From: Heptranchias perlo
Lineage: Eukaryota
Assembly: GCF_035084215.1 (NCBI RefSeq)
Contig: NC_090340.1
Span: 15,500,001 to 15,564,000, forward strand
Direction of reading: 5' to 3'
Length of the DNA: 64,000 nt
The notes under the pieces were generated by a model, which saw only the letters and a list, made by a program, of their open reading frames with translations, had not been told where the DNA came from and searched no databases. Of the stretch, positions 12,989 through 34,084 are shown piece by piece (position 1 is the stretch's first letter; every line of letters starts with the position of its first letter). A program made the position numbers and the translations under genes.

Positions 12989-13191
12989 TCAGGCACAGAT
13001 AGGGTCCCTGTCTCTCTTACGGTGTTTCTTGACCTTTGGTGCGGTGTCGTTAACTTTTGCTACTCTGTTTGGGTTCCTCGGTGGCGGCTGGGTGTTGCCT
13101 TTTTTTGCTCCCTCTTCTTTTCTTTTGGGCCTTGCTGTTTTTGACTCAGAGCAGCGTACACAAGGCTGCATTTCAACATTGTCTTCAGGGG
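12989..13191 (-). CDS. VJ-C1-TM IgSF receptor, exon 5 (cytoplasmic tail and stop)
   Basis: Acceptor ttcttacag at 13192; phase 1 matches the TM exon; encodes APEDNVEMQPCVRCSESKTARPKRKEEGAKKGNTQPPPRNPNRVAKVNDTAPKVKKHRKRDRDPICA*. It is the only long non-repeat open frame with a good acceptor that I found downstream of the TM exon. Confidence 0.7.
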
Positions 13192-13619
13192 CTGTAAGAA
13201 AAACAGCATGAAATATAAGGGACAAAATGTTCATTAAAAAATATAAGATGCTGGAACATCCCTGATGTTAGTAAATGTATTGCCTGGTGCAGTACTGAAC
13301 CATGTTGACCAGGAAGATCGACGTTGTAATCTTACCAAGGTGCTGGTAGGGCCACTAAAATTGACCTCAGCACCTGTGGCCTAGGAAGTGGGAACGTCAA
13401 GCAAAATTTCCACTCCTGTGATTCCTGCTAGAAAGTGCATGTGTGAACATCAGGATCAGGAGCTGCCTCCCACAGCTTAATAGCTTGGCTGGATTTACAA
13501 ATGAAGAATGGCCATTTGGAAGAAAAAGATGCAAAGATTAGGCCTCCTTGTCGTGATTTCCAGACTACAATACAAAGCTTTAAAGTTTGTGCTTGTTTTG
13601 TCAATTTTCTAAGAAGAAG

Positions 13620-13945
13620 AACTTGCATTTATATTAAACCTTTCACGACATCCCAAAGCACTTTACAGCCAATTAAGTACTTTTTGAAGTGTAGTCACTA
13701 TTGTAATGTAGGAAACAGAGCAGCCAAATTGCCCATAGCAAGGTCCACGAATGAGATGATAACCAGGTAATCTGTTTTAGTGATGTTGGTTGAGGGATAT
13801 ATATTGGCTGTGGGTTCTTTTACGTCCATCTGCAGGGGCAGACAGGACCTTAGTTTAACATCTCATCCAAAAGACGGCGCCTCCGACAGTGCAGCACTCC
13901 CTCAGTACTGCACTGGACTGTCAGCCTAGATTATGTGCTCAAGAC
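13620..13945 (-). mobile_element. tRNA-derived DeuSINE (SacSINE1/AmnSINE1-like); further copies ~20325-20600, 25890-26015, 30260-30460, 37460-37850 (all -)
   Basis: Reverse complement of the Deu-domain 'gcagtactgagggagtgctgcactgtcggagg..ccgtcttttggatgag' with an L2-like tail; same family as 53568-53995. Confidence 0.75.
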
Positions 13946-13958
13946 TCTTTCCTCACTA

Positions 13959-16097
13959 AGAGAGGAAAATTGAGTGTAAATCAGATTTAAAGAGATAGGG
14001 ACAATTAAAGGGCAGTATCACAATAGGCAACAAAAATTCACCATGTAACAGCTGATCAGTCCTATAGCCATAAATTACAGGATCACCCTCTCCAATGAAG
14101 GATAATTGACTCAGGATATGGAATTGAAATAGGGCTGCAGGAGAGATGCTATAATATCGCAATATTATGATACAGCATATTGACAGCTAGAAAATCCAAC
14201 CAATGCTTGTAACCTACAAGCTAAAAATTAGTATGAAAGGCTGTAAAAGGGAGGAACACTTTTATTTTACTACATGTAGCACGATGAATATTTAAATAAC
14301 TTATTATTTAAATATTTATACTATTTGCTTCTAATGCATTTTTTAAGGCATTATTAAAGTTTCTACAATTCCAAATCAAGGATATCGTGGGGTTAAATTT
14401 CTCCTCAGGTTCTCCCACTCGTCTGCTGAAACTTCAGAAGAGCCGCGGAAACCGTAGAAAAACATTGTAAAGGCCATTTTTCCAGGATTTGCATGGTACA
14501 TCCGTGGAAACTACAGCAGGCAAGTAGGAAAACACCGAGAAATCTGCCCCCCCCCCCCCCGCCCCCCAATGGTCTGGAATGTGTTTAACTTGTGTTTTTT
14601 TTTAAACACACCTTTCAATCAGATGGATTAATACTTTATTTATTTTGGTAGTACCTAGTTTAACACTTTAACAATGCACCACCAAAATATAATACAACAT
14701 TAATCCCTCTGACTGTGAATTGCAGGAAAAAAAGTTAAGCACATACCATACTTCCTTTATCCAGCAACTCCCATAACTCCAAAAGGAAGTCCTGAAAGTT
14801 GCAATCAACTCAGGAAAAAAAATTAAATTCAAAAATGACTCGCAAAATCAGAATGTCCTAATTAAATTGGGACAGTTGAGGTATGGGCCAAAGACACATG
14901 GAGCAACTGATATTTTGCGATAGGACTAGATATTTCGTGAAAATTAATTTACAGCTGAAATAATTCAGATGCAATGACTGACAAACATATGGGATCTGGT
15001 TTCCATTTTTACTCAGTTCAAAGAAATGCTCACTTTTGTTTCATAATTTAATAGACCATAAAATACAATTCATACCATGAGAGCAGACAGGTTTCTTTAT
15101 AAACTGAGAAAACTACATTAAGGAACAAGACCCATAGTATAGGATACAATTAAAGTTGGAGAGTAAAAGAGAATACAATGTAATTCAGGAAGTAGTAATT
15201 AGGCGATGCCAAGCTTGGGTTTCAATGCTTGTAGGTTGTAGGAGGAAGGAAAGACTGTGGAGGTAAGGAGCTCCACAGTTTTGAGGTTTTGGGAAGGAAT
15301 GAGTTAGTGTTGGGGACAGAGCGATGAGTCTTCATTTCAAAAAAGTGAGGTTGCAGGGATGACTTATTTGGAACTTAGCAGAAATAAGAGAGGAAAATTC
15401 AATAGATAAATAACCATTGTAAGAATCATTAAAATAAAGACAGATGAAAAAAGGTGCAATGGAGAGAAAGGAGTTGGAGACAAGAAGTGAGAGAAGAATC
15501 ACCCTAAGACAGGACTGTGAGCTTGGCTGTAAGAAAATTATAATTCTATATAATTGAAAACAATTATATAGAATTACATAGAATGTACAGCACAGAAACA
15601 GGCCATTCAGCCAACTGGTCCATGCCAGTGTTTATGCTCCATATAAGCCTCCTCCCTCCCTACTTCATTGACTACTTCAAGAACTGCTGAATGTGGAACA
15701 AGTGTTTGGCATAGAAAAGGAAGCCAAGCTTCTTGAGGGCAACATTTAGTGGTGGAGATGTACGAGTTTCAGTTGAGATAAAGAGAGATAACAAAGATAA
15801 AGAATGCAGTGGTTGAAGGACTAAACATTGAACAAAAAAGATAAGAGGTGACAGTTTTTAGTTTATTTGTAAGCAACTTGAAGAAACTATCTTTGAAGAA
15901 TTGAAAAAAACTGAAATGTTTGTTGCACTCAATGCTCTGTTGTAAACTCATCTGCATAATTATTTATAGGACATGGTGCAGAGTGAGACAGGTGTAGAAA
16001 GGACAGTAATGCTGGGAGAGGAAAATTGAGTGTAAATCAAATTTAAAGGGATAGGGACAATTAAAGGGCAGTGTCACAATAGGCAACAAAAATTCAG
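13959..16097. repeat. ~80-bp direct repeat pair (13959-14040 and 16016-16097)
   Basis: gagaggaaaattgagtgtaaatca.atttaaag.gatagggacaattaaagggcagt.tcacaataggcaacaaaaattca present twice with 3 mismatches. Confidence 0.9.
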
Positions 16098-17569
16098 AAA
16101 GTCTTTGGAGAGCCTCAAAAGCCATCTCAAGCATTGAGCAACCTTTGTCATGGCCGAAGTGATAGGGGATTAATAAATAGACCACAAAAATAAAGGGAAA
16201 GGGAACCCTCGGTGTAGGCGTAAGTCTGAAGACAAGTGGTGGGGAACCAAACGCCCAATTTCCTGTTTGATGGCTGCATAACTAGCGGTGGTGCTGCATG
16301 AGATGCTTGTGAGGTGGTTGCACTCTGTACCACTCCACGGTAATATATCTCCATAGGCCAAAATTGCAACAGGTCTGCAAAGAGGTTCAGCCAAGTTTGA
16401 GATCACAGCTGACTGTTACTATCCCCATGTGTGCCAGTTTAAAGCTACATGGTTGCCGCAGGTGTCCTTGTAGAAGATGGTACAGCTCTGCATCTGCCTC
16501 TCTGTTGGCCCAGACCTTAAGAAGACTGGCTCCCATAATCATTGCCAGGTCTGTGTACCAGGGCCTGCAGAAAGGTTGATGGCAACTTGGTAGTTGCAGC
16601 CAATGTTAAGTCTTGATCACCCTGCCATTCATTCTTTCATGTAGTACTATATAAAGGATGATTTGCCATCCAGTATAACAGTTAGTCGGCTTAGCTGACA
16701 CAGCTTCCTTTGGGAACAGGATCATTCACTGCCAAATCTGCCAAAGTGAAGTAATTTCATCTCTCTGCAGATGTGGGTGTTGGTAGGACAGCACTGCGCA
16801 CCTCTCGGACAGCCTGACCTGCCAGATATCCCTCTACAGATCTATTCCTTTTCTGCCAAACATGTCAGCTCAGAAGAATCCTATTGGAAAACCCACTGGT
16901 GTCAATAAAGGCGTTGGGGGCAAAACAATAATAATTAAGGCAAATGGCACAAAGGCTCATGAAAGCGCAAGTGCCAGCAGAGAGAAAAAAAAAAGGAGTT
17001 TGTCCAAATGGCCCAGGAATTACCTAAAAACATTCAGTGCCCTTTAACTATCTGAAAGGTCCACTCATGGAATGATGTATGCCTGGTTTCCTGGGTATAG
17101 GTTGGACTTGGTGCTCAGCAGGTCTACCAGCTGACTGGAAAGTTAAATGGGGGACTTGTGCACCCCTATTTTAAAATGCTATTAAGCTCCCACCTGCTTC
17201 AGCTGGAACTTCTATCACACACTCTCGACCTGAAAAGAAACTTATGGAGAGCTGATTTTCACCTCATTTAGCTCTCGCTTGCTCCAGTTTTTGGAGTCAC
17301 AGTGAAGATGAAAGTTGGCCCCATTCTATTAAGAAACAAGAGCCAGGACCCATGATTCCCCACACAGAGTTCTTAATGTAGAGAGGGGATGGCCAGTGGT
17401 TTAACCACCCAAGGAGCTGGGAAAATAAGCTGATTCAACTTGGGCTGTTCTTAAGAACTGCCTTGATTGATATTGGCAGACTCCTAGGAGTAGGTAACCA
17501 ATGGGGAATGCAGCATGGAATGGAGAAGAAAATAATTTAAAATGGGGACAAAACGTGACTGGACGATGC

Positions 17570-17920
17570 AGGGATTAGACAGTGCCCTTTGAATTCTGGA
17601 ATCTGAGTTTGAATCAGCCCAGATTTAAGGGATGAAAACCTTCTCTGTCTGTGCCTGTGAGGACGTTACAAGCGATGGGTTTGGGCACTTTCATTTCAGC
17701 TCCTAGTGGTTATGAGGTACCAGAGCACAGACTCTGATAAATAATCATTAACTGACAATCTCACACCAGAATGGGTGGTGTGGGAAATGGAAAAATGTCA
17801 CACTGGTGCAGTGAGACATGCTCTGTAGAGATGGGCACTGAAGCACATCTCTGGGAAGAGCAGAAGGAACTTTACTCTGTGCTATACCTAATCTGTGAGT
17901 TCTTAGTGTCCAGTATGGAT
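17570..17920 (+). mobile_element. LF-SINE-like SINE (degenerate)
   Basis: Same family as 28850-29195 (tRNA-like head, 'cctagtgg', 'gtgctatacct' tail). Confidence 0.5.
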
Positions 17921-18154
17921 GAGTTCCAATTTGCAGCACTAACATCCTTCATCTTGCTCAGCTCAAAAAAAATCACACAAAGCATCATTTAAAAACTGAG
18001 ACAATAGTTTTGATCCTAAAGCCTAGTTATTTCAGATTAATATAATTCATTCACAATATTTTTTCAGCTTGTTATCATTTCTGTATTTGTACAATTGATA
18101 AATATTAAATCTGAAAATCTAACTATCGTTAATGAAATGAGATGACACCCTTAC

Positions 18155-18265
18155 CTTTACATTTACAGAACTTACAACAAAGTACTGGTGCAATAATCAG
18201 GAGCAGTAGAGATAATGCTCCACACAGATAGATCCACCAAGGGAAAGAGGAAATGAAACTTCTGT
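18155..18265 (-). CDS. VJ-C1-TM IgSF receptor, exon 4 (transmembrane)
   Basis: Acceptor tgtgttgcag (18266), donor AAAG|gtaagg; 111 nt, phase 1-1; DRSFISSFPWWIYLCGALSLLLLIIAPVLCCKFCKCK is a ~20-aa hydrophobic segment followed by a basic/Cys stop-transfer. Confidence 0.85.
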
Positions 18266-18422
18266 CTGCAACACACATACAACACAGAAAAATAAAGTCA
18301 TTCACTTTTAGAAGGAAAATGATGGTGTAGCAGGTTAGCACATTCTTTCTGGTGGCTCTAAACAGATGAAATTATGAATTTAAGCTCCTCGCACAAAAAC
18401 GACACACCAACCTTCATGACTC

Positions 18423-19397
18423 TTGATATATATTAATGACTTGGATTTGGGCGTACAGGGCACAATTTCAAAATTTGCTGATGACACAAAACTTGGAAGT
18501 GTAGTGAACAGTGAGGAGGATAGTGATAGACTTCAAGAGGACATAGACATGCTGGTGGAATGGGTGGACAGGTGGCAGATGAAATTTAACTCAGAAAAAT
18601 GTGAGGTGATATATTTTGGTAGGAAGAACGAGGAGAGGCAATATAAATTAAAGGGCACAATCCTAAAAGGGGTACAGGAACAGAGTGATCTGGGGGTATA
18701 TGTACACAAATCGTTGAAGGTGGCAGGACAGGTTGAGAAAGTGGTTAAAAAAGCATACGGGATCCTGGGCTTTATAAATAGAGGCATAGAGTACAAAAGC
18801 AAGGAAGTCATGATGAACTTTTATAAAACATTGATTCGGCCACAACTGGAGTATTGTGTCCAGTTCTGGGCACTGCACTTTAGCAAGGATGTGACTGCCT
18901 TAGAGAGAGTGCAGAAGAGATTTACTAGAATGATTCCAGGGATGAGGGACTTTAGTTACGTTGATAGACTGGAGAAGCTGGGGTTGTTTTCCTTGGAACA
19001 GAGAAGGTTGAGAGGTTTGATAGAGGTATTCAAAATCATGAAGAGTCTAAACAGAGTAGATAGAGAGAAACTGTTCCCATTGGCGGAAGGGTCAAGAGCC
19101 AGAGGACATAGATTTAAGGTGATTGACAAACAAACCAAAGGTGATATGAGGAAAAACTTTTTTACACAGCGAGTGGTTAGGATCTGGAATGCACTGCCCG
19201 AGGGGGTGATGGAGGCAGATTCAATCATAGCCTTCAAAAGGGAACTGGATAAGTACTTGAAAGGAAAAAATCTGCAGGGCTATGGGGATAGGGCAGGGGA
19301 GTGGGACTAGCTGAATTGCTTTTGCATAGAGCCAGCATGGACCGAATGGGCCGAATGCCTCCTTCCATGCTGTAACCTTTCTATGATTCTATGATTC
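18423..19397 (+). mobile_element. CR1 LINE, 5'-truncated, with open RT C-terminal ORF (295 aa)
   Basis: 'IYINDLDLGVQGTISKFADDTKLG...RVVRIWNALP...FKRELDKYL'; tail (ttctatga)n. Confidence 0.95.
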
Positions 19398-20614
19398 ACA
19401 CCCAATATTCCAATTAATGTTCCTGGGACATATAGGTTTGTGCCAGGGGTGCCAAGCTCATACAATTACACCTCATAAGCCTTCTGTGTAATGAATTTGA
19501 GAATCTCAATCCAGTTCCTGGTTGGTGTGGGTCAAAACTGTTCACAATTCAGTCCAAATTAGCAATAAATAGGCTATCTCAATTAGAGAATCCACAGAGT
19601 TGGCTGATGGGAGTGAAAAAATGACTGGAATCATAGAATCACAGAATCATAGAAATTTACGGCACAGAAGGAGGCCATTCGGCCCATTGTGTCTGTGCCG
19701 GCTGAAAAAGAGCTATGCAGCCTAATCCCACTTTGCAGCTCTTGGTCCGTAGCCTTGTAGGTTACAGCACTTCAAGCGCATATCCAAGTGTCATAGATGG
19801 TGCTCTTCTGAAGTTGGAGTTAAGAGTCCTTTATCAGAGTCTTGCATCTTACCCACATCACATTTGACTTGGGAATGTTTGATGCTGGAACAAGGAAAAT
19901 GTTCTTTTCCACAGCACTCACCTTGATTAAGCTCGAAATAAAATTCCCCCTATATATACACATTTTAAAAATATTTAGAAAATAAAGCAGTAATAAAACG
20001 TTGTAAATTGAAACAGTGGTGGGGGGGGGGGGACTTTATCCGTTTGCTACATGTAGCAACAACTTCATAAATGTTTTTGTGAAGATTTTTGCTGCTTTTT
20101 CCAATGAAATTGTAAACACATTGATAAAGAACACAACTACAATTTCACTAGAAATGCTGAACAGAGGAAATCTTTACAAATGCATTCATCACTTGAACTC
20201 TTACTACGATGTGTTTTATCTTGGTTAGCACACATTACAGTAGTCAAATGTTGAACCCTTAACTTTTTAAATGGAAGTCACATGGCTAATTTGGATTATG
20301 TCGTACATTTTTTGCTGCTTAAAGAAAGAACATGCATTTATACAGCACCTTTCACAGCCTTAGGACGTCCCAAAGTGCTTTACAGCCAATTAAGTACTTT
20401 TTGAAGTGTAGTCGCTGTTGTAATATAGGAAGCACAGCAGCCAATTCACACATAGCAAGATCCCACAAATAGCAATGAAATAAATGACCGGATAATCTAT
20501 TTTAGTGAAGTTGGTTGAGGGATAAATTTTGGCCAGGACACTGGGGAAATTCCCCTGATCTTCTTCGAAAAGTGCAGTGGGATTTTTACAGACTAGGGGC
20601 AGACTGGGGTAACA

Positions 20615-20800
20615 TGCACATGTATTTGTGTGTGCGTGTACACGTGTGTGCATATATGTGTATGTTTATACGTGTGTGTATACATGTCTATGTGTACACG
20701 TGTGTATCTGTACATATGTGTACGTGTGCAGGTGTATATGTGTACATAGGTGTATATGTGTGTGTATGTGTGCATGTGGGTGTGTATGTGTTTGTGTGTG
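20615..20800. repeat. Degenerate (TG/TA)n microsatellite
   Basis: Alternating purine-pyrimidine tract, e.g. gtgtgtatgtgtgcatgtgggtgtg. Confidence 0.9.
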
Positions 20801-21200
20801 CCTGGGATGAGATCAGGAGTCGGTTTGGTTGCCATGGTCTCCACATCCTGATCATACATGAAGAATAGGCAATTAAGTGAGGTAGCAGAGGGCTGCCAAC
20901 ACCTGTGCAACATTGCCTCAACAAGAGTCAGTGCACCCAGGAAAGGAGAGAAAGAAGGGGAAAAATTGAGTAAAAGTAAGCTTCAAAAGTAGGGTAAAAT
21001 CATGTTGCTGAGCTCAGCAGCTGCAATTGGTACACAGCACTATCAGCCTAAACCACCACCACCGAGCTCTCAATTCCTGCAAAATCAGCAGCACTGCACT
21101 GCCTGGTTGGCATTATTACAGTGCTACCAAACTTGTCCTACCAAATCCAGTGTAACTGCGGCATACAACGATTTCACGCCAAACAAGGTGTTGTTCCTAC

Positions 21201-21497
21201 CTGCAATGCTGACAGTGTAGTTGACCCTGGTTGGAACCTTGAGGGTAGAGTGAAATACCTCACAGATATAAATAGTCCCACTCTGAACAGGCTGTGTCTC
21301 TTCCAAATAACTGGAAACTTCATATAGTCCCTCGGCATTCTGCTCAGTGAATGTGTCTACTTTAGTCACAACTTCTTGACCATTTTTATGCCAAGCAATG
21401 GTGTACTTAGCAGGGTAGAACCCAGATGTTTTACACAAACACATTCGAGAACCATTTGCAAACAGCGTTGACGAAATCTTCAGAGGATCTGGAGAAG
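21201..21497 (-). CDS. VJ-C1-TM IgSF receptor, exon 3 (C1-set Ig constant domain)
   Basis: Acceptor tttttctatag (21498), donor GCAG|gtagga; 297 nt, phase 1-1. C1 hallmarks: C-KTSGFYP, W in 'IAWHKNG', 'NAEGLYEVSSYL', 'YICEVFHSTL'. Confidence 0.93.
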
Positions 21498-24510: not shown

Positions 24511-27500
24511 CAATAAAACCCATCGGGGAAGAAGTGGAGGCCCTAAGAGGTCAGTTTTAAACTTATCTATGTGGGCTAGGAAGAGCAGGAGCGCTGCTAT
24601 GGGCCCGACAAGAAAAGCTTGGCCCTCTGTTGTCTCGAACCCCGCATTCCCATCCATGAGACCCTGCAGAAGCCCTCCCCCAAACTTCTGAGTGACAGTG
24701 GGAAGCCTCTGGGCCGCCCGATCTCCGCCTGCCGGTAGCTGACCACCTGCCTCTTTACACCCATTTCAGGCGGGCAGCTGGTCAGCTAATATCAGCCAGG
24801 CCTCCCACACAGTCTCCCAGACAGGCAGCCTGCCAGCTTCTAGTCCAGGAGTTAACCCCACCCCAATAAAATCGCTCCTTTATATATTTCTGCTACCCCA
24901 TGTCACAGGCCTTGGTGCCAGTGTAGCAGCAAGTGATTAGAATTCTATAACGTTCTTATATCTCTCAAATATGTTTTCTTTTGCCCATACTCTTCATTGC
25001 ACGTGTGCAATACATTTGATTATTGTAGCTTAGATCGTGGAGTAGATTGTACGAATTCGGACTCCCAGCAGGAAGCTTCGCACACCGGGAGTGCACATCA
25101 GGAATTTGGGGGTGGAGCTCTGCTGCTCACAGGATTTTCTGCCAATTTAAATGAATGGACAGGAAATCGTCTGGCCTGAATTCCCAATATGTCCTCCTGG
25201 CAGGAAAAGTACTGCATTGGTATTATGAATTTTACTGTATTATGCCGTCTTTTAACATAGCCTATACTCCTGGTTCCAATGCCCTGATTATTCCAGCTTC
25301 ACTGTGGGGAATTATACCTGTAAATCTCTTACAATTCATGAAAAGGTTCACTGCCAAAGCATTCATTCAGCTTTTACTTTCCTCTTTGAAAATGTGAATG
25401 GTGCCTGATTTAACAAGGTAGGAGTATTGTATAGTATACAAACAGTATGCCTCTTCTACAGGTTGAGTAGAATTCCTCTCCAGTCTTCGGTACAATAAAG
25501 CATCTTTACGGGATTTCTTTTCATTTTATATTAAGTGTTTCTAGTGCTAAAGACCCAAGAACCTTTGCTTTTTCTTCAAAGTGCTCAAAAATTTGGGTGG
25601 GGGAGTGAGAAATGTTCTTTGATCATGATATGTAATCATATGATCAATTCATTTACAAAGAATGTATTTATCATTCCGCCATCTATAGCACACAGAGGAA
25701 ACCTCTCCCCTCCAGTATTTACTTTCTCCACTACCTTACTCAGTCCATATAATGAAAGGCTGGACTGTGTTTTCCATTATATAAATTGAAACGTTAGTCT
25801 GCAATAATTAGTTGTAAAGTCCTGGGGGGTAATTTTAACTTTGGCCGATAGTGTAAAATTGGCAATGTCAAATTGGTCGCCCATTATAGATGTTGCAGCA
25901 CTCCCTCGGTACTGCACTGAAGTTCGAGCCTAGATTGTGTACTCAAGTCCCTGCAGTGGAGCTTAAACCCACAAACTTCTGACTCAGAGCCAAGAGTGCT
26001 ACTACTGAGCCCAGGCTAATAAACAAGAACATCTGCATCTAGAATTAAAGCAAATCCATGAAATTATAATAAATTAGTCTGGAACCAGGGGATATACATA
26101 TAAGGTTAATTGTGAAAAATTTAGAATAGGGAGCAGAAAACGCATTTTTTTGACAAATAGGCTTGTGAGGCAGTAGGATGCTCTACGAGAGTTAGTGATT
26201 GAAGCAGAGATCATGTTAACATTTAATAGGTTAGAAAGGTGGGTGAACAAAGGGGGAATAAAAGGATATGGGAACAGGGTGGGTATTCCGGATACGGACT
26301 ACTGCTTTTATGGAGAATAAAGACCAACATCGACTGGGTGGGCGAACCAGCCTCTTTCCCTTTTATAATATCTAAGTAATTCTAAGCTGTAAATAAATTA
26401 CTGTCAACAATCTGAAGCATCCTTTAATTAAACAATAGTTTGGTGCTATGGACAGTGGATAGGCTGTCGGGTTGATTGCTGAGTCTGTCAATTCTATACA
26501 TCTTCAGACATTTTGAAAGTCACTATAAAACAGGAATACATTTACAACGGGGGCTGTTGAACCTCAGGCCAGTGACAGTACTTTTAAGCTACACCAACAG
26601 CCCATCTAATAATGAAACCCTCAGCCTAGTGAGAAACGATGATTGGGAGCTAACCAGGATAGGCTAAGATCATAAATTACAGGATATAGTTTTATAACTA
26701 ACAAAATATATCCCAGCCCTGGTCCCTAATGTGGTCCTGATTCAAACGATAATTAAAGATCCAACATCCCAAAACTAGACCTTGAATTTTTTTACCCAAT
26801 TATTAGTTGGCACCGCTATTCATTAGAGCTGTTCCACTGGAGCACATTAAGGTTTGAAAAGCTAATGTTAAGTCAATGGTTGGGTTTGGACCTGTTGGGT
26901 GGAATTGTTTGTTAACATGAGGTTGAATGGTTATAGAAACATAGAAAATAGGAGCAAGAATAGGCCATTCGGCCCTTCGGGCCTGCTCCACCATTCAAAA
27001 TCATCGTGGCTGATTGTCTAACTCAATACCCTATTCCCACTTTTTCCCCATATCCCTTGATCCCTATAGCATTAAGAAATATATCTATCTCTTTCTTGAA
27101 TACATCTAATGACTTGGCCTCCATTGCCTTCTGTGGTAGAGAATTCCACAGGTTAAATATGATTTAACATTTAAACACTAAACGTTCTGATTGGAATACT
27201 ATTTCCCATTACTTTTCAGGGATCGGGGATCTGGGATCTGTTATTTAAAATTTGGGACTAATCCAATGAGTGTTTCACTTGAACCAGAGGGGTGCGTTAG
27301 GGCCGGCGGGCCGAGTGTCGTGAACGAGCCCTCGGGAGGGAGAATCGCCCTCTTGAAGGCCACTCCTGAAATAACAGCCGCAGCACCAGCACACTGAAAA
27401 ACAGGTTTTGTAATTCAATTTGGGTAGAAATTGCTCTCGTGTTTAATCCTGGAACTTCGGTGCTTGTTATTGTAATTCTATATATGTGGCCCGCGGGTCT

Positions 27501-28849
27501 ATACGATGTATAATTAAGTGACCCATTAACACAGGGAGTTGGACAGCCGCTGCCATGAATTGCAATTTGTTGTAACGTTTATAATTTCAACAATAGTTTA
27601 AGGGCCATTGGAGGTAATTTTGACATTGTACGATGGTGTAAAACGGGTGAAGCCAATGGAAATAAAAATGGGGAGATGTAAAACGGGCTGCCGATTCGCT
27701 ACCACTGGTTTTACACTATGGCACCGTGTAAAAGTTACCCCCACTTTCTTCAGAAGTCCGAATACTTAAGAGAAATTTATCTCTGAATGCATAGGGGTTA
27801 ATTTTAACTTTGGCCGAAATTGGGACCAGCCGTCTATTATACACCTATTCAACATTTTTTTAAAAATAAACGTAGGCAGGGAAAGAGCTGGCGGTACACT
27901 CAATTCAGACTGTACCAATTCATAGGTCGCGGGAATATTTTCATGTTTGATTTACAGCACCGTTTGATGGTAAGTATCGTGCAATAACTGCAGCCGGTGG
28001 AATGCCATAATTCGGTTAACAAACCCTTTCCTTGCAGAATTCTTCTGCTCCCTGTGTGGAATGACATCCCGGGTTTGGGAAGATTTGATCGGTGGCTATT
28101 TGGAGAAAACTGATAGAAAGACAGTGTCAACAATTTCGCTAGAGATATACAACCAGAGGAGATCTGCACCCGTGTCTACGCCGACCGGGAGAGACACATC
28201 CTATCCCGGCGTCATTTAGAATGAATCACTGACCCTCCCGTGGGCTCGAGTGTCCACGTTATTCAGTACACGGATTTTCTTCCATTTAGTTTCTATTGGC
28301 TTCAGTTCCGGTGGCAGTTTCTCAAAGCAGGCAAAACAGTGTTTCTCGGAACCCAGGAACCGTTGATTTTTCTTTTATGTTCAAAAATGTTGGGGTGAAG
28401 CGGGAAATGTTCTTTGTTCACGATGTGTAATGATATGATCAATACATTTATAAATAATTAATTTACCATTCCGCTACCTATAGCACACAGAGGAAACCTC
28501 TCCCCTCTCAGAGACTGGACTGTGTTGTCCATTATTTAAATTGAAACGTTAGTCTGCAATAATTAGTTTGAAAGACTGGGGGGTAATTTTAACTTTGGGC
28601 GCTAGTATAAAATTGGCGATATCGAATTGCTCGCCCGTTATAGTCCTGCAGGATTTTCCCTGCCGTTGACTTCAATGAAAACGAAATGCGGGCGTGGTGT
28701 ATAAATGAGCAGCTAATTCGACATCGCCCAAAGGTAAAATTATCCCCAGATATTTATGATTGGCTCCTTCATATTTAACCAATTACTAGTATAACTGGTT
28801 TCACAAACAACGTGCCTATCACTGTATCAACTGCCTGCAACAAGTGGGG

Positions 28850-29195
28850 AAATGGGTGCTATAGTGGTTTAGACACTGGGTTTTTGCCTCTGGGACCTGG
28901 GTTCAAATCCCAACCAGACTGATGGGATAAAAGTATCATCTTTCTGCCAGCTGTAAAGGTCCTATGTGAAATGAAAGAGTCGCTAGTGGGCATGGACCTA
29001 CAACACAAAGCTGTCCTGAAAGCTGTGATACTGAATAGCTGCTATGAAAGATGGGAAAAAATCCACACTGCTGCTCTATGAGGTGCTCTCCCGAGGCTGG
29101 GGTTGGAGCAGAGTGGAGAGAACTATACTGTGCATTTGGTTATGCTGTACCTGACCTGGGAGTGCTTGATGCTAACACTGGGTGCCTGAAATGGG
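28850..29195 (+). mobile_element. LF-SINE-like SINE
   Basis: 'gcctctgggacctgggttcaaatcc..ccagac...aaagt..tc..tctg...gctgt....gtcctatgtgaaatga...ctagtgg...atgctgtacctg' matches my recollection of the LF-SINE consensus; minus-strand copy at ~56875-57230. Confidence 0.55.
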
Positions 29196-29279
29196 AAGAA
29201 TCACAAAAAAAATTGCTGAGCTTTGTGATGTTATATTTTCTCTGGAGCTAAACTGCCAAAATATTTGCGAATGAACTAT

Positions 29280-30250
29280 ATATTAATGACTTGGACTTGG
29301 GTGTACAGGGCACAATTTCAAAATCTGCAGATGACAAAAAACTTGGAAAGTTAGTAAACAGTGAGGAGGATAGTGATAGATTTCAAGAGGATACAGACAG
29401 GCTGGTGGCTTGGGTGGACACGTGGCAGATGAAATTTGACACAGAAAAATGCAAAGTGATAATTTCAGTAGGAAGAACGAGGAGAGGCAATATAAACTAG
29501 AGGGCTCAACTCTAAGAGAGTTACAGGAACAGAGAGATCTGGGGGTATATGTACACAAATCATTGAAGGTGGCAGGGCAGGTTGAGAAAGTGGTTAAAAA
29601 AACATTTGGGATCCTGGGTTTTATAAATAGAGGCATTGAGTTCAAAAGTACGGAAGTCATGATGAACCTTTATAAAACATTGGTTCGGCCACAACTGGAG
29701 TATTGAGTCCAGTTCTGGGCACCGCACTTCAGGAAAGATGTGAAGGCCTTAGAGAGGGTGCAGAAGAGATTTACAAGAATAATTCGCAAGTGATTAGGAA
29801 GGCAAATGGAATGTTGTCATTTATCGCAAGGGGAATGGAATATAAAAGTAGAGATGTTTTGCTACAGTTGTACAGGGCATTGGTGAGACCACATCGAGAA
29901 TACTGTGTGCAGTTTTGGTCTCCTTATTTAAGAAAGGACATAATTGCTTTAAAGGCAGTTCAGAGAAGGTTCACTCAACCGATTCCTGGGATGAGGGGGT
30001 TATCTTATGAGGAAAGGTTGGACAAGTTGAGCCTGTATACTCTGGAGTTTAGAAGAATGAGAGGTAATCTTATTGAAACATATAAGTTCCTGAGGGGACT
30101 TGAAGGGGTAGAAACTGTAAGGATGTTTCCCCTTGTGGGAGAGACTAGAACTAGGGGGTCACAGTTTAAAAATAAGGGGTCTCCCATTTAAGACGGAGAT
30201 GGTGAGAAATTTTCTCTCTCAGGTCGTGAGTTTGTGGAACTCCCTTCCCC
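29280..30250 (+). mobile_element. Two juxtaposed CR1 ORF2 fragments from different subfamilies (junction ~29780)
   Basis: First part 'SKSADDKKLG...VRPQLEY'; second part restarts upstream in the RT region with 'QVIRKANGMLSFIARG...QFWSPYLRKD'. Confidence 0.85.
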
Positions 30251-31789
30251 ATGTAGAAGCAGAACATGCATTTATTTAGCATCTTTCATGTTGTTCCAAA
30301 GCACTTTGCAGCCAATAAAGTGTGAGATGTTGGTTGAGGGGTTAGGGCAGGATAGGACACTGGGACAATGCCCCTACTCTTCTTCAAATAGTGGCATGGG
30401 ATCTTCCACCCAAGTGGGCAGATGGGGCCTCAGTTTAAAGTTTCATCTGAAAGACAGCACCATAAAACAGGAATACTTAAGAAAATGACTGTTTGAAGAT
30501 AAAAGTCGTCACATTCTTTGCATTTACAATGAGGGCTGTTGAACCTCAGGCCTGGGAGAGTAATTTTAAGTTACACCAATAGCCCATCTAATAATGGAAC
30601 CCTCAGCCTAGTGAGAAACGATGGTTGGGAGCTAACCAGGATAGGCTGAGATCATAAATTATGGGACATAGTTTGTAAAACCCTAACAAAATATATCCCA
30701 GCCCTCGTCTCTAATGTGGTTCTGATTCAAACGGTGATTAAAGATGCAATATCCCAAAATTAGACCTTGATTTTTTTTTTAACCCAATCATTAGATGGCA
30801 TCGCTATTCATTAGAGCTGTGCCACTGGAACACGTCAAAGTTTGAAATGCTAATGTGAAGTCATAGGTTGGGTTTGGACCCATTGACATCATGGATGGAA
30901 TTGTCCGTTAACAGTTTTGGAAGAACATACATTTGACATGAAGTTGAATGGTTAAAAGTTTCAACATTTATGCACTAAATATTCTGATTCAAATAATATT
31001 TCCCATTACTTTTCAGGGATCAGCGGGTTCGTGATTTAGATTTGGGACTAATCCAATGAGTGTTTCACTTCGACTAGAGGGGTGCGTGTAGTGAACAAGC
31101 CCTGGCAATCCTTTCCCTGGAGGGAGACTCACCCTCTTGAAGACCACTCATGAAGTAACAGCACCAGCACATCTAAAAACAGTTGTTGTAAATTAGTTTG
31201 AGGAGGAATTGCTCTCGTGTTTAAGAACACAGGAACAGGAGTTTAGCCCCTCGAGCCTGTTCTGCCATTCAATAAGGTCATGTCTGATCTGTGACCTAAC
31301 TCCACATACCTGCCTTAGCCCCATATCCCTTAATACCTTTGGTTAACAAAAATCTATCAATCTCAGGTTTAAAATTATCAAGTTAATCCTGGAACTTCGG
31401 TTTTTGGCATTGTAATTCTTTATATGTGGCCCGCCAGCCTCTACAATACATAATTAAGTGACCCATTTACAGGTGGCTTTGGACAGCCTCCAGCATGAGT
31501 TGCACATTGTTTATAATTTCAACAATAGTAAAGGGACACTGGGGGTAATTTAGACTTTGTGCCATAATGTAAAACGGGTGACGACAATGGAAATAAAAAT
31601 CCTGAGAGATGTAAAACTACTTAGAGAAACTTAGCTCTGAATGCATGGGGGAGGGGGGAGGGGGGAGTAATTTTAACTTTGGGCGATATTGGACCTGCCG
31701 CCTGTTGTACGCCTATTCAACATTTTTTTTAATTAAATGAAGGCAGGAAAAGAGCTGGCCGTACAGTCAATACAGACTACCAATTAATA

Positions 31790-32036
31790 ATTGTAAACAA
31801 TTTTACAACACCAAGTTATAGTCCAACAAATTTATTTTAAATTCCACAAGCTTTCGGAGGCTTCCTCCTTCCTCAGGTGAACGGTGGGGAACGGTGTCCA
31901 CACCGTTCACCTGAGGAAGGACGAAGCCTCCGAAAGCTTGTGGAATTTAAAATAAATTGGTTGGACTATAACTTGGTGTTGTAAAATTGTTTACAATTGT
32001 CAACCCCTGTCCATCAGCGGCATCTCCATATCATGG
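31790..32036. mobile_element. Penelope-like-element-derived fold-back element with two inverted hammerhead-like motifs
   Basis: Long inverted arms; 13-bp TSD ctaccaattaata (31777-31789, 32037-32049); empty site visible in duplicate copy A (~27908-27928); same family as 6536-6778. Confidence 0.8.
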
Positions 32037-33274
32037 CTACCAATTAATAGGTCCCGGTAATATTTTTCATGTTTGATTTACAGCACCGTTTGATGGTAAG
32101 TATCGTGCAATAACTGCAGCCGGTGGAATGCCATAATTCGGTTACCAAACCCCTTTCCTTGCAGAATTCTTCAGCTCCCTGTGTGGAATGACATCCCGGG
32201 TTCAGGAAAGTTTTGCTCGTTGGCTCCATTTGTGCCTACGCCAACCGGGAGAGAGAAATCCTACCCCGGCCTCATTTAGTATGAATCGTTGACACTCCCC
32301 TGGGCTTAGGTGTCCATGTTATTCAGGACATTGTTTTTCTTTTGTTTATTTGATATTGGCTTCAGTCCCGGTGGCAGTTTCTGAAAACATGAAATTTATT
32401 CTGGACAAGAGCCTTGAAATTCCCAGTTTACTCCCTCCAGCCGAGCGCTACATTGCAGGATATTGTAACTAAATCAAAGCGGACGGGTACGGTTTGCTTT
32501 AAAATCTGCAGGAAACATTGCAGTTTCCCTTGCGTGAAACGACTACATTTTTCCTGGTAAGAGTTGAAATATTTCAATCGGCGGACGTCCAGGCGGGTTT
32601 CCGCTTCTGCGCTGCCCAGCCTGCGATTTTCCATTCGGAAACAAACGACTAGCTGTTTTTAAGGGGTATTAATGAAAAGTGAAAGATCCGAGATCATTGG
32701 ACTGGATGTTATGGATAATGGGAAACGCTTCGGTTACATTTCACATCGACATCTTGTAACCGTACCAGAGCAAATTATGGAATATACTTTTTAAAAAGAC
32801 TGTCATCTTCTGCAGTAAATGATTTCGAAAAAGCTGTTCAGGCAGGAGCCTGCGGTAACCCCAGAACAATAGACGAATGCCGAGGTATGAGGCGGTTTGT
32901 GCAATACTCAGCACTCGGCTTTCTTCTCTCAACCTTCACCAGACTTTCTTGCGCAACAAAAGCCCCGACTCCCGTGGCCACAGTGACAGTGATGCTGGAT
33001 ACAGCTGCACCCAGTCAGCTCTCCAGTCACCGAAACAACGGTCTGCCGTGCACTGGTTATTGTTTAAGTATACCATAATGAAGAGTCGCAAATGAGAAAT
33101 TAATGGCAATTCGCTTTATCCGTCCCTCTCGTTCTCTCACTCCTTCTCAGTGTCCTATCTCACTGGCCCGCTATCCCACTGTTTAATCTCACTGGCCCGC
33201 TATTCCATCCCAGTGTCCCGCTGTCTAATATTTGGAGAAACAGATGTAAGGGCCCCGTTCCCCAGGTCACTCAC

Positions 33275-33580
33275 CTCTTACACTAAGCTTTACGCCGGTT
33301 CCATTTCCAATAAATTCACCTTCCACTCTGCAATAATAGACACCAGCGTCTCCGATTTTCACTTTCCAAAGGCGCAACGTGGCGCTTGCTTTAGACTCAA
33401 TCCGGTAGCTTTTTCTGGGATCTTGTCTCGAGTTTAAGAATTCCCGTTCGGCATCTTTCCACCAGTAGACTTTGACGTTGTTTATATTTCTGAACAGGGG
33501 GAATATGCAATGAAACGTCACGTTCTCTCCTGTCATTACATCGCTTACATCAGGGGTCTGCGTCACTTGGAGATCGGCAA
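33275..33580 (-). CDS. VJ-C1-TM IgSF receptor, exon 2 (V-set domain with germline-encoded J-like G strand)
   Basis: Acceptor ttttttgtaatag (33581), donor AGAG|gtgagt; 306 nt, phase 1-1. VADLQVTQTP...GENVTFHC...VYWWK...ATLRLWKVKIGDAGVYYCRVEGEFIGNGTGVKLSVR has canonical C-W-C, DxGxYxC and a GxGxKLxV end. Confidence 0.93.
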
Positions 33581-33907
33581 CTATTACAAAAAATAAACAA
33601 AAACACCAGGCATTTATTTAAGACAGGGGAGAACAATTGGAATAAAACTTCTGGAGGAAAACGGGGCAGCAACATCCCCTCCAGTCGCTAAGTGTTGGCG
33701 AACGGCATTTATTATTTCGCTAGAAATAGCCTCTGTCCTTAATACATAGCGATTAGAGAAAATATTACCCTCCAAAGAACACAATGGAACTATCTCGGTT
33801 ATAAATAACGATATAAATTAAAATATACATAAATTATGATTTTTGTTGGATTACAAGTTTTTTTTTCTATGTAGAGGTTTAATCCCGTGTTAAATGAAGA
33901 CTCTTAC

Positions 33908-33956
33908 CTGTAACGGCCAGGATGAATATGGGGTAAAGTTGGGGTCTTCCAAACAT
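33908..33956 (-). CDS. VJ-C1-TM IgSF receptor, exon 1 (leader peptide)
   Basis: ATG at 33956; MFGRPQLYPIFILAVT plus one G, then a strong donor CAG|gtaaga; 49 nt, phase 1, 327-bp intron to the V exon - the classic Ig/TCR split leader. Confidence 0.75.
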
Positions 33957-34084
33957 ACTGAGCGCTGACATTTGGAACTGAGTACCCGCTGGGCACCAGA
34001 CACTGCGTTGGTTTTGGGGGGAGGGGGGGAGTAATTGTTTTTCCAGTTAATGTGATGTGCAATTCGTTCGAATTGAGACCGAAG

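What the first reader, a model, noticed from the sequence alone, without database searches (positions are those of the whole stretch)
12989..33956. Intact non-rearranging antigen-receptor-like gene: leader / germline-joined VJ / C1 / TM / tail
Seen in sequence: five minus-strand exons (33956-33908, 33580-33275, 21497-21201, 18265-18155, 13191-12989), all phase-1 GT-AG junctions, splice into an open 321-aa frame. The V exon runs from YYC through a short CDR3-like loop (RVEGEFI) into a J-like strand (GNGTGVKLSV) and directly into a splice donor, with no RSS. The second domain is clearly C1-set. Established: C1-set domains are confined to a few jawed-vertebrate immune families (Ig, TCR, MHC, B2M, tapasin/TAPBPR, SIRP, B7-H6), and single-exon VJ domains occur in NKp30, CD28/CTLA4, CD8 and SIRP. 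A VJ-C1-TM gene is the architecture proposed for the pre-RAG ancestor of Ig/TCR (PRARP/VJ-C1-type genes). Inference: this is a shark VJ-C1 receptor that fits none of the named families cleanly (one C1 only, unlike SIRP; no TM charge, unlike TCR/NKp30; has a TM, unlike IgL) and may be undescribed.
Basis: partly seen in the sequence, partly recalled or inferred. Interest (0 to 1): 0.85.

Follow-up and report, generated by a model that had tools for sequence, protein, structure and literature searches.

The report
Conserved shark VJ-C1 membrane receptor gene
This is a real, intact five-exon gene of the sevengill shark for a non-rearranging, antibody-like (V plus C1 domain) membrane protein that sharks, rays and chimaeras all keep, that databases name inconsistently, and whose function is still unknown.

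Summary
Five minus-strand exons with GT-AG, phase-1 junctions encode leader, germline-joined VJ-type V domain, C1-set domain, membrane anchor and a basic tail. A public predicted protein of Heptranchias perlo matches the five exon translations where I compared them; it starts five codons further upstream (326 aa, not 321). A second predicted isoform skips the membrane exon.

The gene is not isolated. It is one conserved lineage, seen in 17 cartilaginous-fish species, inside a large chondrichthyan family of VJ-C1 receptors. This scan had already met that family on other DNA of this genome. The lineage differs from its tyrosine-motif paralogues: no tyrosine in the tail, no charge in the membrane span, a conserved cysteine-rich and basic tail, and V-domain loops as conserved as the framework.

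No named family fits. Human B7-H6 is the best structural match and SIRP-alpha the best whole V-C1 sequence match, both at family-distant levels. I found no paper describing the gene, but key Flajnik-laboratory papers were not readable.

Verdict: a real new member of the known kind "non-rearranging VJ-C1 IgSF receptor". It probably binds a fixed partner and does not signal through ITIM or DAP12-type routes.

The parts
33908..33971 (-). Exon 1: start codon and signal peptide. The ATG is at 33971 in the database model, or at 33956, which is the Met conserved in all orthologues. The donor GT follows 33908.
   Evidence: P0164; Met invariant in 11 of 11 rows of alignment A1.
33275..33580 (-). Exon 2: V domain with a germline-joined J-like G strand (GNGTGVKLSV) that runs into the splice donor. 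There is no RSS.
   Evidence: Pfam V-set 1.5e-11; no heptamer in or beside the exon; pLDDT above 90.
21201..21497 (-). Exon 3: C1-set constant domain.
   Evidence: Pfam C1-set 2.8e-13; single-domain structural matches to MHC class II, Ig CL, IgNAR C and TCR C domains at rmsd 1.4-2.0 over 91-101 residues.
18155..18265 (-). Exon 4: stalk, uncharged TM helix (PWWIYLCG...) and a cysteine-rich juxtamembrane stretch (CCKFCKCK). It is 37 codons long and is skipped in the predicted isoform X2.
   Evidence: TM helix 232-255 in the model; P0169 lacks exactly this exon.
12989..13191 (-). Exon 5: 67-residue basic tail (18 K/R, 9 D/E, no Tyr) with a conserved CxRC motif and a KKHRKR stretch, then the stop codon.
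   Evidence: invariant C270, R272, C273 and nearly invariant N299, H316 in A1; predicted disordered.

Best explanation
What it is (about 0.9). It is a functional gene of Heptranchias perlo for a type I membrane glycoprotein: signal peptide, one VJ-type V domain made without rearrangement, one C1-set domain, an uncharged TM helix, and a cysteine-rich, basic, tyrosine-free tail. It lies 10 kb downstream of OGFOD1 on the same strand. It represents a lineage seen in 17 species of sharks, rays and a chimaera. That lineage sits inside a large chondrichthyan family of VJ-C1 receptors, most of which carry tyrosine motifs. I saw one copy per species among the proteins I fetched, but no genome was searched for further copies. 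The family stands at roughly equal, distant similarity to B7-H6, SIRP, NKp30-type V domains and Ig/UrIg C1 domains. I file it under none of them.

How it probably works (inferred, about 0.35). The V-domain loops are as conserved as the framework, so it binds one fixed, probably endogenous, partner. It has no ITIM, ITSM or ITAM tyrosine and no TM charge. It therefore cannot signal through SHP phosphatases or DAP12/FcR-gamma-type adaptors as its paralogues would. It acts instead as a non-signalling counter-structure, that is, a ligand, adhesion partner or decoy. It is made as a membrane form and, by skipping the TM exon, as a soluble form. One candidate partner is the set of receptors of its own family that earlier scan notes place in clusters 124 kb and 317 kb away. 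That would parallel other homologous ligand-receptor pairs such as CD200/CD200R (recalled).
For: Gene structure and domains.

Database model: P0164 matches the exon translations (against 38), and the TM-less isoform is P0169. Further TM-less predictions: Heterodontus P0165 (read), Callorhinchus P0011 (read) and P0172 (same length and near-identical scores, not read), and Hemiscyllium P0158 and Chiloscyllium P0159 (judged from length and loss of the PWW motif).

Orthologues: 16 proteins carry both the PWW membrane motif and the CxRC tail motif, and Pristiophorus has the PWW motif with another tail. These come from 17 species.

Tree (V-C1 columns, 52 rows, two mammalian SIRPs as outgroup): 15 elasmobranch orthologues form one clade (94/98) whose order broadly follows the species tree. 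A sister clade with the same TM motif but a tyrosine tail has 100/99 support.

Exhaustive V-exon search: of the 97 hits of 600 aa or less among the best 150, 53 score at least 100 bits to P0164.

Loop conservation: BC loop 0.78 and FG loop 0.86 in 11 orthologues, against 0.42 and 0.58 in 29 paralogues.

Tail and TM: no Tyr and no TM charge.

Fold. Nearest structures: B7-H6 at Z 15.9 and 29% identity over 192 residues. Nearest profiles: SIRP-alpha 80 bits and B7-H6 77.8 bits.

OGFOD1 exons. Linked clusters: earlier scan notes only.
Against: - The four runs that hold 0.46-0.63 of the sampled words of the exon 1-2 stretch are only guessed to be RNA.
- The ligand or decoy role is inference from absent motifs. 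No partner was tested.
- The conserved TM and tail could equally mean an unknown way of signalling.
- The chimaera orthologue sits on a long branch and groups weakly (86/60) with the sister clade. The AU test merely does not reject its inclusion (p 0.378).
- Placement relative to B7-H6, NKp30, PRARP, IgL and TCR was not tested by a tree, because no sequences of those families could be fetched.
- The resemblance of the paralogues' tails to the SIRP-alpha tail did not hold up. BLAST of a monotreme SIRP-alpha tail against all stored proteins gave only one hit, at E 0.18.
- A search with the tail alone found only Heptranchias and Heterodontus proteins.
Confidence: 0.55

Rival explanations
1. It is the cartilaginous-fish orthologue or co-orthologue of B7-H6 (NCR3LG1). 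On this reading it is a V-C1 cell-surface ligand recognised by NKp30-type VJ receptors, and the large neighbouring family supplies the receptors.
For: Human B7-H6 is the top structural match: 4zso_E, Z 15.9, 192 residues aligned, 29% identity, the highest identity among the two-domain rows. The A1 profile scores B7-H6 at 77.8 bits over profile positions 84-225. Over a similar span, Ig lambda scores 49.3 and UrIg2 49.8. NCBI names the orthologues of 5 species 'NCR3 ligand 1-like'. Like a ligand, it lacks signalling motifs. From a recalled abstract, Flajnik et al. 2012 reported B7H6 and NKp30 genes 'from sharks to mammals'.
Against: The B7-H6 Z-score is tied within 1 unit with PD-L2, Rst, B7-H3, PD-L1, Neph1 and butyrophilin. 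The HMM match does not cover the first 60 residues of the V domain. The V domain carries a J-like GxG bulge, which the passage seen in PMC11599192 lists for SIRP, NKp30, CD8, CD79, NITR and PRARP. The only neighbour seen is OGFOD1, which by recall is not near human NCR3LG1. The automatic names are just as often 'SIRP-alpha-like'. No tree with B7-H6 could be built.
Confidence: 0.2
2. It is a SIRP-family member. On this reading it is a one-C1 shark counterpart of the non-signalling SIRP-gamma type, derived from inhibitory SIRP-alpha-like paralogues.
For: In the profile search of 5.8 billion proteins, the only hits outside cartilaginous fishes were two mammalian SIRP-like proteins (107 and 67 bits) and one teleost protein. 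SIRP-alpha 2wng is matched in one stretch across the whole V-C1 region (positions 23-209, 80 bits). Offline, the V-C1 stretch scores 61.8 and 52.4 bits to two SIRPs. The V domain is VJ-type. The paralogues carry several tyrosine motifs. Earlier scan notes call the family SIRP-like.
Against: There is one C1 domain, not two, and no further Ig exon was found in the introns. SIRP-alpha is not among the 50 best structural representatives. The SIRP tail shows no significant similarity to any stored shark tail. The word index can miss families. A 2026 survey dates the SIRP family to Tetrapoda (passage in PMC13262535).
Confidence: 0.15
3. It is a signalling co-receptor of an unusual type. The invariant TM motif recruits an unknown membrane partner. 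Alternatively, the cysteine motifs (CKC in the juxtamembrane stretch, CxRC in the tail) bind a Src-family kinase or dimerise through zinc, as the CD4/CD8-Lck zinc clasp does (recalled).
For: The TM and juxtamembrane residues W232, W233, Y235, C237, L243, L244 and C256, and the tail residues C270, R272 and C273, are invariant in 11 orthologues. The TM-exon region is as conserved as the Ig domains: 0.57 mean pairwise identity against 0.57 and 0.55. The sister clade shares the TM motif.
Against: No known motif was matched. Pfam finds nothing in the TM or tail exons, and the tail-only search finds no other family. The tail is predicted disordered. The TM-less isoform would place this tail outside the cell.
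Confidence: 0.12
4. It is a relic of the pre-RAG VJ-C1 antigen-receptor precursor. It would have been kept for more than 400 million years (recalled date), with membrane and secreted forms made by exon choice, as in immunoglobulins.
For: The architecture is VJ-C1-TM with phase-1 exons. Membrane and TM-less isoforms are predicted in 5 species. Among the single domains shown, the C1 domain is nearest to UrIg2 C1 (39.6 bits) and Ig lambda C (37.9 bits). The Foldseek hits shown are all Fab light chains. Passages in PMC10751288 treat VJ-C1 genes as remnants of the precursor.
Against: The similarity to Ig, TCR and UrIg is no higher than to B7-H6 or SIRP. The gene sits beside OGFOD1, not in a region I could tie to the MHC or the antigen-receptor complex. 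The loops are invariant.
Confidence: 0.06
5. It is a germline-joined immunoglobulin light-chain or TCR gene, a secondary derivative of a rearranging locus.
For: Sharks have germline-joined Ig genes (recalled). NCBI calls three orthologues 'immunoglobulin lambda-1 light chain-like'. The Foldseek hits shown are light chains.
Against: It has a TM exon and a long tail. In the exhaustive V search, all 58 hits of 138-493 aa with a single matched stretch that I read are family members. Hits looked up further down the list are SIRP-, pIgR- and NCR3-named proteins, not Ig or TCR. Identity to light chains is 20-24%. The Fab lead in Foldseek reflects the make-up of the PDB.
Confidence: 0.02

Closest known systems
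B7-H6 (NCR3LG1)
   Same: The ectodomain is V plus a C1-type domain on a single-pass TM. It is the best structural representative (Z 15.9, 29% identity over 192 residues). It scores 77.8 bits from the end of the V domain through the C1 domain. Neither protein carries receptor-type signalling through a TM charge.
   Different: The shark V domain has a J-like GxG G strand, and its N-terminal half does not align by HMM. The tail is unrelated and basic. The genomic neighbour is OGFOD1. Orthology was not tested.
SIRP family (SIRP-alpha/beta/gamma)
   Same: Non-rearranging VJ-type V domain followed directly by a C1 domain, with phase-1 exons. SIRPs are the only mammalian hits of the family profile. 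The alignment is continuous across V-C1. Both families mix inhibitory-type and motif-less members.
   Different: One C1 domain instead of two. No ITIM tail and no TM lysine. No tail similarity. Not among the top 50 structures.
NKp30 (NCR3)
   Same: A germline VJ-type V domain. The nearest V domains outside cartilaginous fishes include a frog protein named NCR3 (P0130). One TM-less short isoform in Pristis is auto-named NCR3-like.
   Different: NKp30 has no C domain and has a charged TM (recalled). This gene has a C1 domain and an uncharged TM. NKp30 chains are not among the best 60 PDB matches of the V exon.
UrIg / UrIg2 (shark non-rearranging Ig-like genes)
   Same: A shark germline-joined V followed by C1. 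UrIg2 C1 is the best single C1 match shown (39.6 bits).
   Different: The solved UrIg2 construct is V-C1-C2-C3, forms disulfide-linked homodimers, and the gene is linked to the antigen-receptor complex (abstract of PMC12227049). This gene has a single C1, a TM and a tail, and lies next to OGFOD1. Structural Z is 14.1 at rmsd 12.3.
PRARP genes (Fu et al. 2019, recalled abstract only)
   Same: [quoted passage not shown]
   Different: PRARPs are reported from bony vertebrates with an ITIM-like tail (recalled). This lineage has no tyrosine in its tail. No PRARP sequence could be fetched, so the relationship is untested.
Tyrosine-motif VJ-C1 paralogues of cartilaginous fishes (automatic names only)
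   Same: Same exon plan and same V and C1 families (100-209 bits to P0164). The sister clade shares the PWWIY...CKFC membrane motif.
   Different: The paralogues have ITIM-like tyrosine motifs, several copies in at least some genomes (four distinct proteins on the Heptranchias chromosome), and variable BC and FG loops (0.42 and 0.58). This lineage showed one copy per species among the proteins fetched, has no tyrosine in the tail, and has conserved loops (0.78 and 0.86).

Membership tests
C1-set Ig domain | Sequence profile of the C1-set and a C1 fold | tested here: met
   Pfam PF07654 at 2.8e-13 and 50.5 bits against a cut-off of 21. Matches to MHC class II, Ig CL, IgNAR C and TCR C domains at rmsd 1.4-2.0.
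VJ-type (germline-joined) V domain | V-set domain whose G strand carries the GxG bulge of the J consensus, encoded in one exon without an RSS | tested here: met
   V-set at 1.5e-11. G115 is nearly invariant and G117 invariant in the orthologues. The exon runs into the donor. No heptamer lies in or beside the exon. The J consensus is quoted from PMC11599192.
Rearranging Ig/TCR | Separate V and J segments flanked by recombination signal sequences | tested here: not met
   V and J are continuous in one exon. Only 4 heptamers occur in 21 kb, and none adjoins the exon.
SIRP | V domain followed by two C1 domains | tested here: not met
   One C1 exon. tblastn with the V and C1 exons and a six-frame ORF scan find no further Ig exon in the window. 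The database model has two Ig domains.
SIRP | ITIM tail (alpha) or positively charged TM that recruits DAP12 (beta) | tested here: not met
   No Tyr in the 67-residue tail and no charged residue in the hydrophobic span.
SIRP | Groups with SIRPs in a tree, or shares synteny with the SIRP cluster | tested here: inconclusive
   SIRPs were used only as the outgroup. Profile scores are 52-107 bits. The only neighbour seen is OGFOD1.
B7-H6 | V plus C1-type ectodomain with a B7-like extended arrangement | tested here: met
   Top of 48,161 representative chains, Z 15.9, 29% identity over 192 residues, but tied within 1 Z with other B7, Neph and butyrophilin chains.
B7-H6 | Orthology (tree, synteny) and binding to NKp30 | not testable with these tools
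NKp30 | Single V domain without a C domain, and a TM arginine (recalled) | tested here: not met
   A C1 exon is present and the TM is uncharged.
UrIg/UrIg2 | V-C1-C2-C3 ectodomain, as in the solved UrIg2 construct | tested here: not met
   Only one C domain, followed by a TM. The UrIg2 construct and dimer are taken from the abstract and section headings of PMC12227049.
PRARP | VJ(-C1) membrane protein with an ITIM-like tail; sequence relationship to chicken PRARP1/2 | not testable with these tools
   The paper (pmid 30770416) is not held and no PRARP sequence was available. The tail here has no tyrosine.
Chondrichthyan VJ-C1 receptor family (unnamed) | Shared V and C1 sequence families and exon plan; placed among them in a tree | tested here: met
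   53 of the 97 hits of 600 aa or less among the best 150 score at least 100 bits to P0164. The tree places the lineage among them, apart from the SIRP outgroup, at 100/100.

The most novel reading that the evidence does not exclude
This lineage is a surviving non-rearranging VJ-C1 relative of the antigen-receptor precursor. It would have been kept since before the split of chimaeras and sharks, and it makes a membrane form and a secreted form by skipping one exon, as immunoglobulins do. Its secreted form, a V-C1 chain with a cysteine-bearing basic C-terminal extension, would work as an innate, invariant, light-chain-like recognition molecule.
Probability: 0.07. Interest if true: 0.85.

Novelty: new member of a known kind. 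Interest (0 to 1): 0.5.

Why it matters
Non-rearranging VJ-C1 genes are the raw material in every model of how antibodies and T-cell receptors arose. Each well-defined one in cartilaginous fishes is a data point for those models.

This gene adds a member of the shark VJ-C1 family that is conserved across Chondrichthyes, lacks tyrosine motifs and has invariant binding loops. It is therefore a natural candidate for a fixed ligand or counter-structure of the fast-evolving paired receptors that earlier scan notes place next to it.

It also shows that genome pipelines label one orthologous gene under seven different family names: Ig lambda, tapasin or tapasin-related, NCR3, NCR3LG1, SIRP-alpha, CD276 and BTNL10. 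That can mislead surveys that date the origin of these families.

If the ligand idea holds, it would give a tractable receptor-ligand pair for studying innate self-recognition in the oldest jawed vertebrates.

Tried and rejected
Read evidence. I chose exons 3-4 with their intron for the single read-laying run, so as to see one joint and two loose ends.

I could not read the synteny of OGFOD1 in other species or the chromosome positions of the Heptranchias paralogues. A look-up of earlier notes by the sequence of P0020 was blank.

SIRP-like tail. The spacing of the paralogues' tyrosine motifs reminded me of SIRP-alpha. BLAST of a monotreme SIRP-alpha tail against all stored proteins gave one hit at E 0.18, so I dropped that argument.

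Tail homologues. A search scored on residues 255-326 of P0164 alone found 4 proteins among 4 candidates, all Heptranchias or Heterodontus. There is no lead to a function.

C1-only profile against the PDB. I meant it to show the B7-H6 alignment, but multi-domain antibodies filled the 60 rows and B7-H6 was not visible. It gave only the single-domain scores for UrIg2 (39.6 bits) and Ig lambda (37.9 bits).

Foldseek against the PDB. All rows shown are Fab light chains at rmsd 9-10, so it does not discriminate between families.

ESM Atlas. The neighbours are generic Ig-like, CD80, OX-2, butyrophilin, kappa-like and tapasin-related clusters, all scoring 0.95-0.96. Nothing decisive.

Further Ig exons or paralogues in the window. 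There are none.

Literature.
- Searches: 'VJ-C1' + shark (1 paper); PRARP alone (106 papers, and the 15 listed were all unrelated); 'antigen receptor precursor' or nonrearranging (44); PRARP + antigen receptor (3); NKp30/shark/C1-set/SIRP (17); a six-term SIRP/shark search that was too loose (1,516); SIRP + shark + immunoglobulin superfamily (23); B7H6 + NKp30 + shark (16). None describes this gene or its family.
- Seen as passages: PMC10751288, PMC11599192, PMC13262535, PMC8236899, PMC3964593, PMC6514059.
- Seen as abstract, outline and a term search: PMC12227049.
- Not held, so nothing seen and cited only from recall: PMC10530332 (UrIg 2023), pmid 30770416 (PRARP 2019), PMC3709836 (B7H6/NKp30 2012), PMC4594805 (2015 review).
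- Supplements were closed and may hold gene lists that bear on 'undescribed'.

Tree. I picked 61 of the 189 stored proteins by hand. I dropped 9 before building: P0170 and P0189 because they matched only in part, and seven multi-V proteins (P0009, P0014, P0021, P0072, P0063, P0061, P0103) that matched on the V domain only.

Full report
OBSERVATION

Exon 1 (to 33908) ends in a GT donor. Exons 2 (33580-33275), 3 (21497-21201) and 4 (18265-18155) are each bounded by AG and GT. Exon 5 (13191-12989) follows an AG and ends in a stop codon.

Translated one by one, the exons give:
- a hydrophobic leader;
- a 101-residue V domain;
- a 98-residue constant domain;
- a 36-residue stalk/TM/cysteine-rich piece;
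- a 66-residue tail.

The lengths add up to 321 codons plus stop, and every junction is in phase 1. Pfam calls exon 2 V-set (1.5e-11) and exon 3 C1-set (2.8e-13), and finds nothing in the last two exons.

The V exon runs from YYC through a short loop and a J-like strand (GNGTGVKLSV) directly into the donor. No recombination-signal heptamer lies in or beside the exon. Four lie in the 21-kb span, where I estimate about 2.6 by chance, and the nearest is about 300 bases into the intron. All whole-length work used proteins returned by the databases.

INDEPENDENT MODEL AND SPECIES

An exhaustive HMMER search with the V exon, followed by a search with its best full-length hit, returned P0164. This is a 326-residue NCBI prediction from Heptranchias perlo. 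It matches the five exon translations where I compared them by eye, and the exon lengths from 33971 give 326 codons.

A second prediction, P0169 (289 aa), lacks exactly exon 4. That would give a secreted V-C1 chain carrying the basic tail. Similar TM-less predictions exist for four more species:
- Heterodontus P0165 (read);
- Callorhinchus P0011 (read) and P0172 (same length and near-identical scores, not read);
- Hemiscyllium P0158 and Chiloscyllium plagiosum P0159 (judged from length and loss of the membrane motif).

These are pipeline predictions. I could not see reads. The four runs that hold 0.46-0.63 of the sampled words of the exon 1-2 stretch, whose exons make up about half of it, are only guessed to be RNA.

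FOLD

An AlphaFold2 model built on a 44-row family alignment has both Ig domains at pLDDT above 90, a TM helix at 232-255 and a disordered tail.

Alone, the C1 domain superposes on MHC class II, Ig CL, IgNAR C and TCR C domains at rmsd 1.4-2.0 over 91-101 residues. The 'clearly C1-set' call therefore stands.

FAMILY

Of the 150 best V-exon hits, 53 are giant multi-Ig proteins and 97 have 600 aa or less. Of those 97, 53 score at least 100 bits to P0164 over V plus C1. Every named V-C1 member I looked up is from a shark, ray, skate or chimaera. That is 10 of 10, and all but three rows.

Within this large family the window's gene belongs to a sharply marked lineage. Sixteen proteins carry both an invariant membrane motif (PWWIY.C) and a tail motif (CxRC). 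One more, from Pristiophorus, has the membrane motif with a different tail. Together they come from 17 species.

I built a careful ML tree on the V-C1 columns, using 52 rows and two mammalian SIRPs as outgroup. Nine rows were dropped first, as listed under Tried and rejected.
- The 15 elasmobranch orthologues form one clade (94/98). Rays and sharks separate, and the shark order broadly follows the species tree, as expected for orthologues.
- A sister clade of five sharks (100/99) shares the membrane motif but has a tyrosine-bearing tail.
- The chimaera sequence sits on a long branch and joins that sister clade weakly (86/60). An AU test does not reject placing it with the orthologues (p 0.378). 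Its tail, which was not used for the tree, carries the CxRC and basic motifs.

WHAT SETS THE LINEAGE APART

The 67-residue tail has 18 K/R, 9 D/E and no tyrosine. The membrane span has no charged residue. Most paralogues carry one to five ITIM-like motifs.

Mean pairwise identity among 10 orthologues is 0.57 for V, 0.55 for C1, 0.57 for the stalk/TM exon and 0.44 for the tail. The membrane piece is thus as constrained as the Ig domains.

In the V domain, the BC (CDR1-like) and FG (CDR3-like) loops are more conserved (0.78 and 0.86) than the A and G strands (0.50 and 0.61). In 29 paralogues the BC loop is the least conserved segment (0.42).

I read this as a fixed binding face, and hence one conserved partner. 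That is the opposite of what an antigen-receptor-like or pathogen-driven receptor would show.

COMPARISON WITH NAMED FAMILIES

By sequence, the orthologue profile finds only two mammalian SIRP-like proteins (107 and 67 bits) and one teleost protein outside cartilaginous fishes. That search depends on shared five-residue words.

Against all solved structures, the same profile gives:
- SIRP-alpha: 80 bits, in one stretch across V-C1;
- B7-H6: 77.8 bits, from the end of V through C1;
- Ig lambda: 49.3 bits for the V-end plus C1 stretch;
- UrIg2: 49.8 bits for the same stretch.

By structure, B7-H6 heads 48,161 representative chains (Z 15.9, 29% identity over 192 residues). It is tied within one Z unit with PD-L2, Rst, B7-H3, PD-L1, Neph1 and butyrophilin. 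SIRP-alpha is not among the 50 rows shown. Foldseek returns only Fab light chains, which reflects the make-up of the PDB.

The V exon alone is nearest to kappa V and PD-L1 V domains at about 31 bits. NKp30 is not among the best 60.

Outside cartilaginous fishes, the nearest V domains belong to turtle and lizard multi-V proteins, a frog protein named NCR3, and teleost proteins.

NCBI's names for the orthologues are spread over Ig lambda-like, tapasin(-related)-like, NCR3-like, NCR3 ligand 1-like, SIRP-alpha-like, CD276 and BTNL10. That is what roughly equal distance to many families looks like.

Defining features of SIRP (two C1 domains; ITIM or charged TM), NKp30 (no C domain; charged TM), UrIg (three more C domains) and rearranging receptors (RSS) were tested and are not met. 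B7-H6 cannot be excluded as the closest relative, and I rate that reading at 0.2.

SURROUNDINGS

Three minus-strand ORFs match human OGFOD1:
- 57257-57484 matches chain residues 239-282;
- 49790-50227 matches residues 347-441;
- 44311-44553 matches the C-terminal 54 residues.
E-values range from 9e-13 to 1e-19.

OGFOD1 therefore ends about 10.3 kb upstream of this gene, on the same strand. There is no second Ig gene in the window. The rest of the window is largely LINE debris.

Earlier notes of this scan place clusters of VJ-C1 receptors 124 kb and 317 kb before the window on the same piece of the genome, and others 11-13 Mb away. I did not check those notes.

MECHANISM

Shown:
- a type I membrane architecture with four N-glycosylation sequons in the ectodomain;
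- no rearrangement;
- no classical signalling motif;
- conserved loops, TM and tail cysteines;
- a predicted TM-less isoform.

Inferred (about 0.35): the protein binds one conserved, probably endogenous, partner. It acts as a non-signalling counter-structure (ligand, adhesion partner or decoy) in membrane and soluble forms, possibly for receptors of its own family encoded nearby.

Rival (0.12): the invariant TM and the cysteine motifs mediate an unrecognised kind of signalling.

LITERATURE

None of the searches listed under Tried and rejected produced a description of this gene or of the chondrichthyan VJ-C1 family.
- Passages of PMC10751288 name UrIg, NKp30 and PRARP as non-rearranging VJ genes and treat VJ-C1 genes as possible remnants of the precursor.
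- PMC12227049 (abstract, outline and a term search) describes UrIg2 and does not mention PRARP, SIRP or OGFOD1.
- A 2026 survey lists the SIRP family as Tetrapoda-age (passage).
- The four papers most likely to overlap were not held.

VERDICT

It needs three corrections: the gene belongs to a large family, it is already predicted in RefSeq, and its invariant loops argue for a fixed partner.

I class it as a new member of a known kind. Interest is moderate. The same family has been met several times in this genome by this scan.

Noticed in passing
window 44311-44553, 49790-50227, 57257-57484 (minus strand): Three coding exons of OGFOD1 (2-oxoglutarate and iron-dependent oxygenase domain-containing protein 1), matching human chain residues 509-562, 347-441 and 239-282. 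The gene ends about 10.3 kb upstream of the VJ-C1 gene, on the same strand. Its 5' part presumably lies beyond the window's end.
   Followed up: partly
window 33956-33971 (minus strand): There are two in-frame start codons 15 bases apart. The database model uses the upstream one. Among the 11 aligned orthologues, only Heptranchias and Pristiophorus have it, while the downstream Met is invariant.
   Followed up: partly
window 13040-13060 (minus strand), residue 307 of P0164: An N-x-T/S sequon sits in the supposedly cytoplasmic tail. By my reading of alignment A1 it recurs at or near this position in 8 of the 10 orthologues with a full tail. It could only be used if the tail is outside the cell, as it would be in the TM-less isoform.
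   Followed up: no
window 10118-10846 (+), 18420-19307 (+, intron 3): Reverse-transcriptase fragments of LINE-type retroelements (Pfam RVT_1 at 4.4e-13 and 2.3e-05). Several other plus-strand ORFs with similar translations (29252-30188, 41135-41431, 60987-61631) gave no Pfam match or were not tested.
   Followed up: partly
window 38014-38595 (+): An ORF with a GDSL-like esterase domain (PF13472 at 4.7e-14) lies next to retroelement-like ORFs at 38599-40472. By recall, this resembles the esterase-bearing ORF1 of some vertebrate LINEs.
   Followed up: no
stored proteins P0035, P0050, P0088, P0110 (other cartilaginous-fish loci, not in the window): Some family members have the V domain joined directly to a TM and a tyrosine-motif tail, with no C1 domain. 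That is an NKp30-like layout. The family therefore includes both V-only and V-C1 forms.
   Followed up: no
stored proteins P0009, P0014, P0021, P0072, P0130: I looked up P0009 (turtle), P0072 (lizard) and P0130 (frog). They carry three to five matched V-domain stretches. P0009 and P0130 have a J-like motif; the scan found one in P0072 too. Automatic names include 'pIgR-like', 'titin-like' and 'NCR3'. P0014 and P0021 have similar motifs but were not looked up, so their species is unknown. These are the nearest V relatives outside cartilaginous fishes in the exhaustive search.
   Followed up: partly
window 11721 and 11752 (minus strand): Two AATAAA signals lie about 1.2 kb downstream of the stop codon. 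They may mark the end of the 3' UTR. This was not checked with reads.
   Followed up: no
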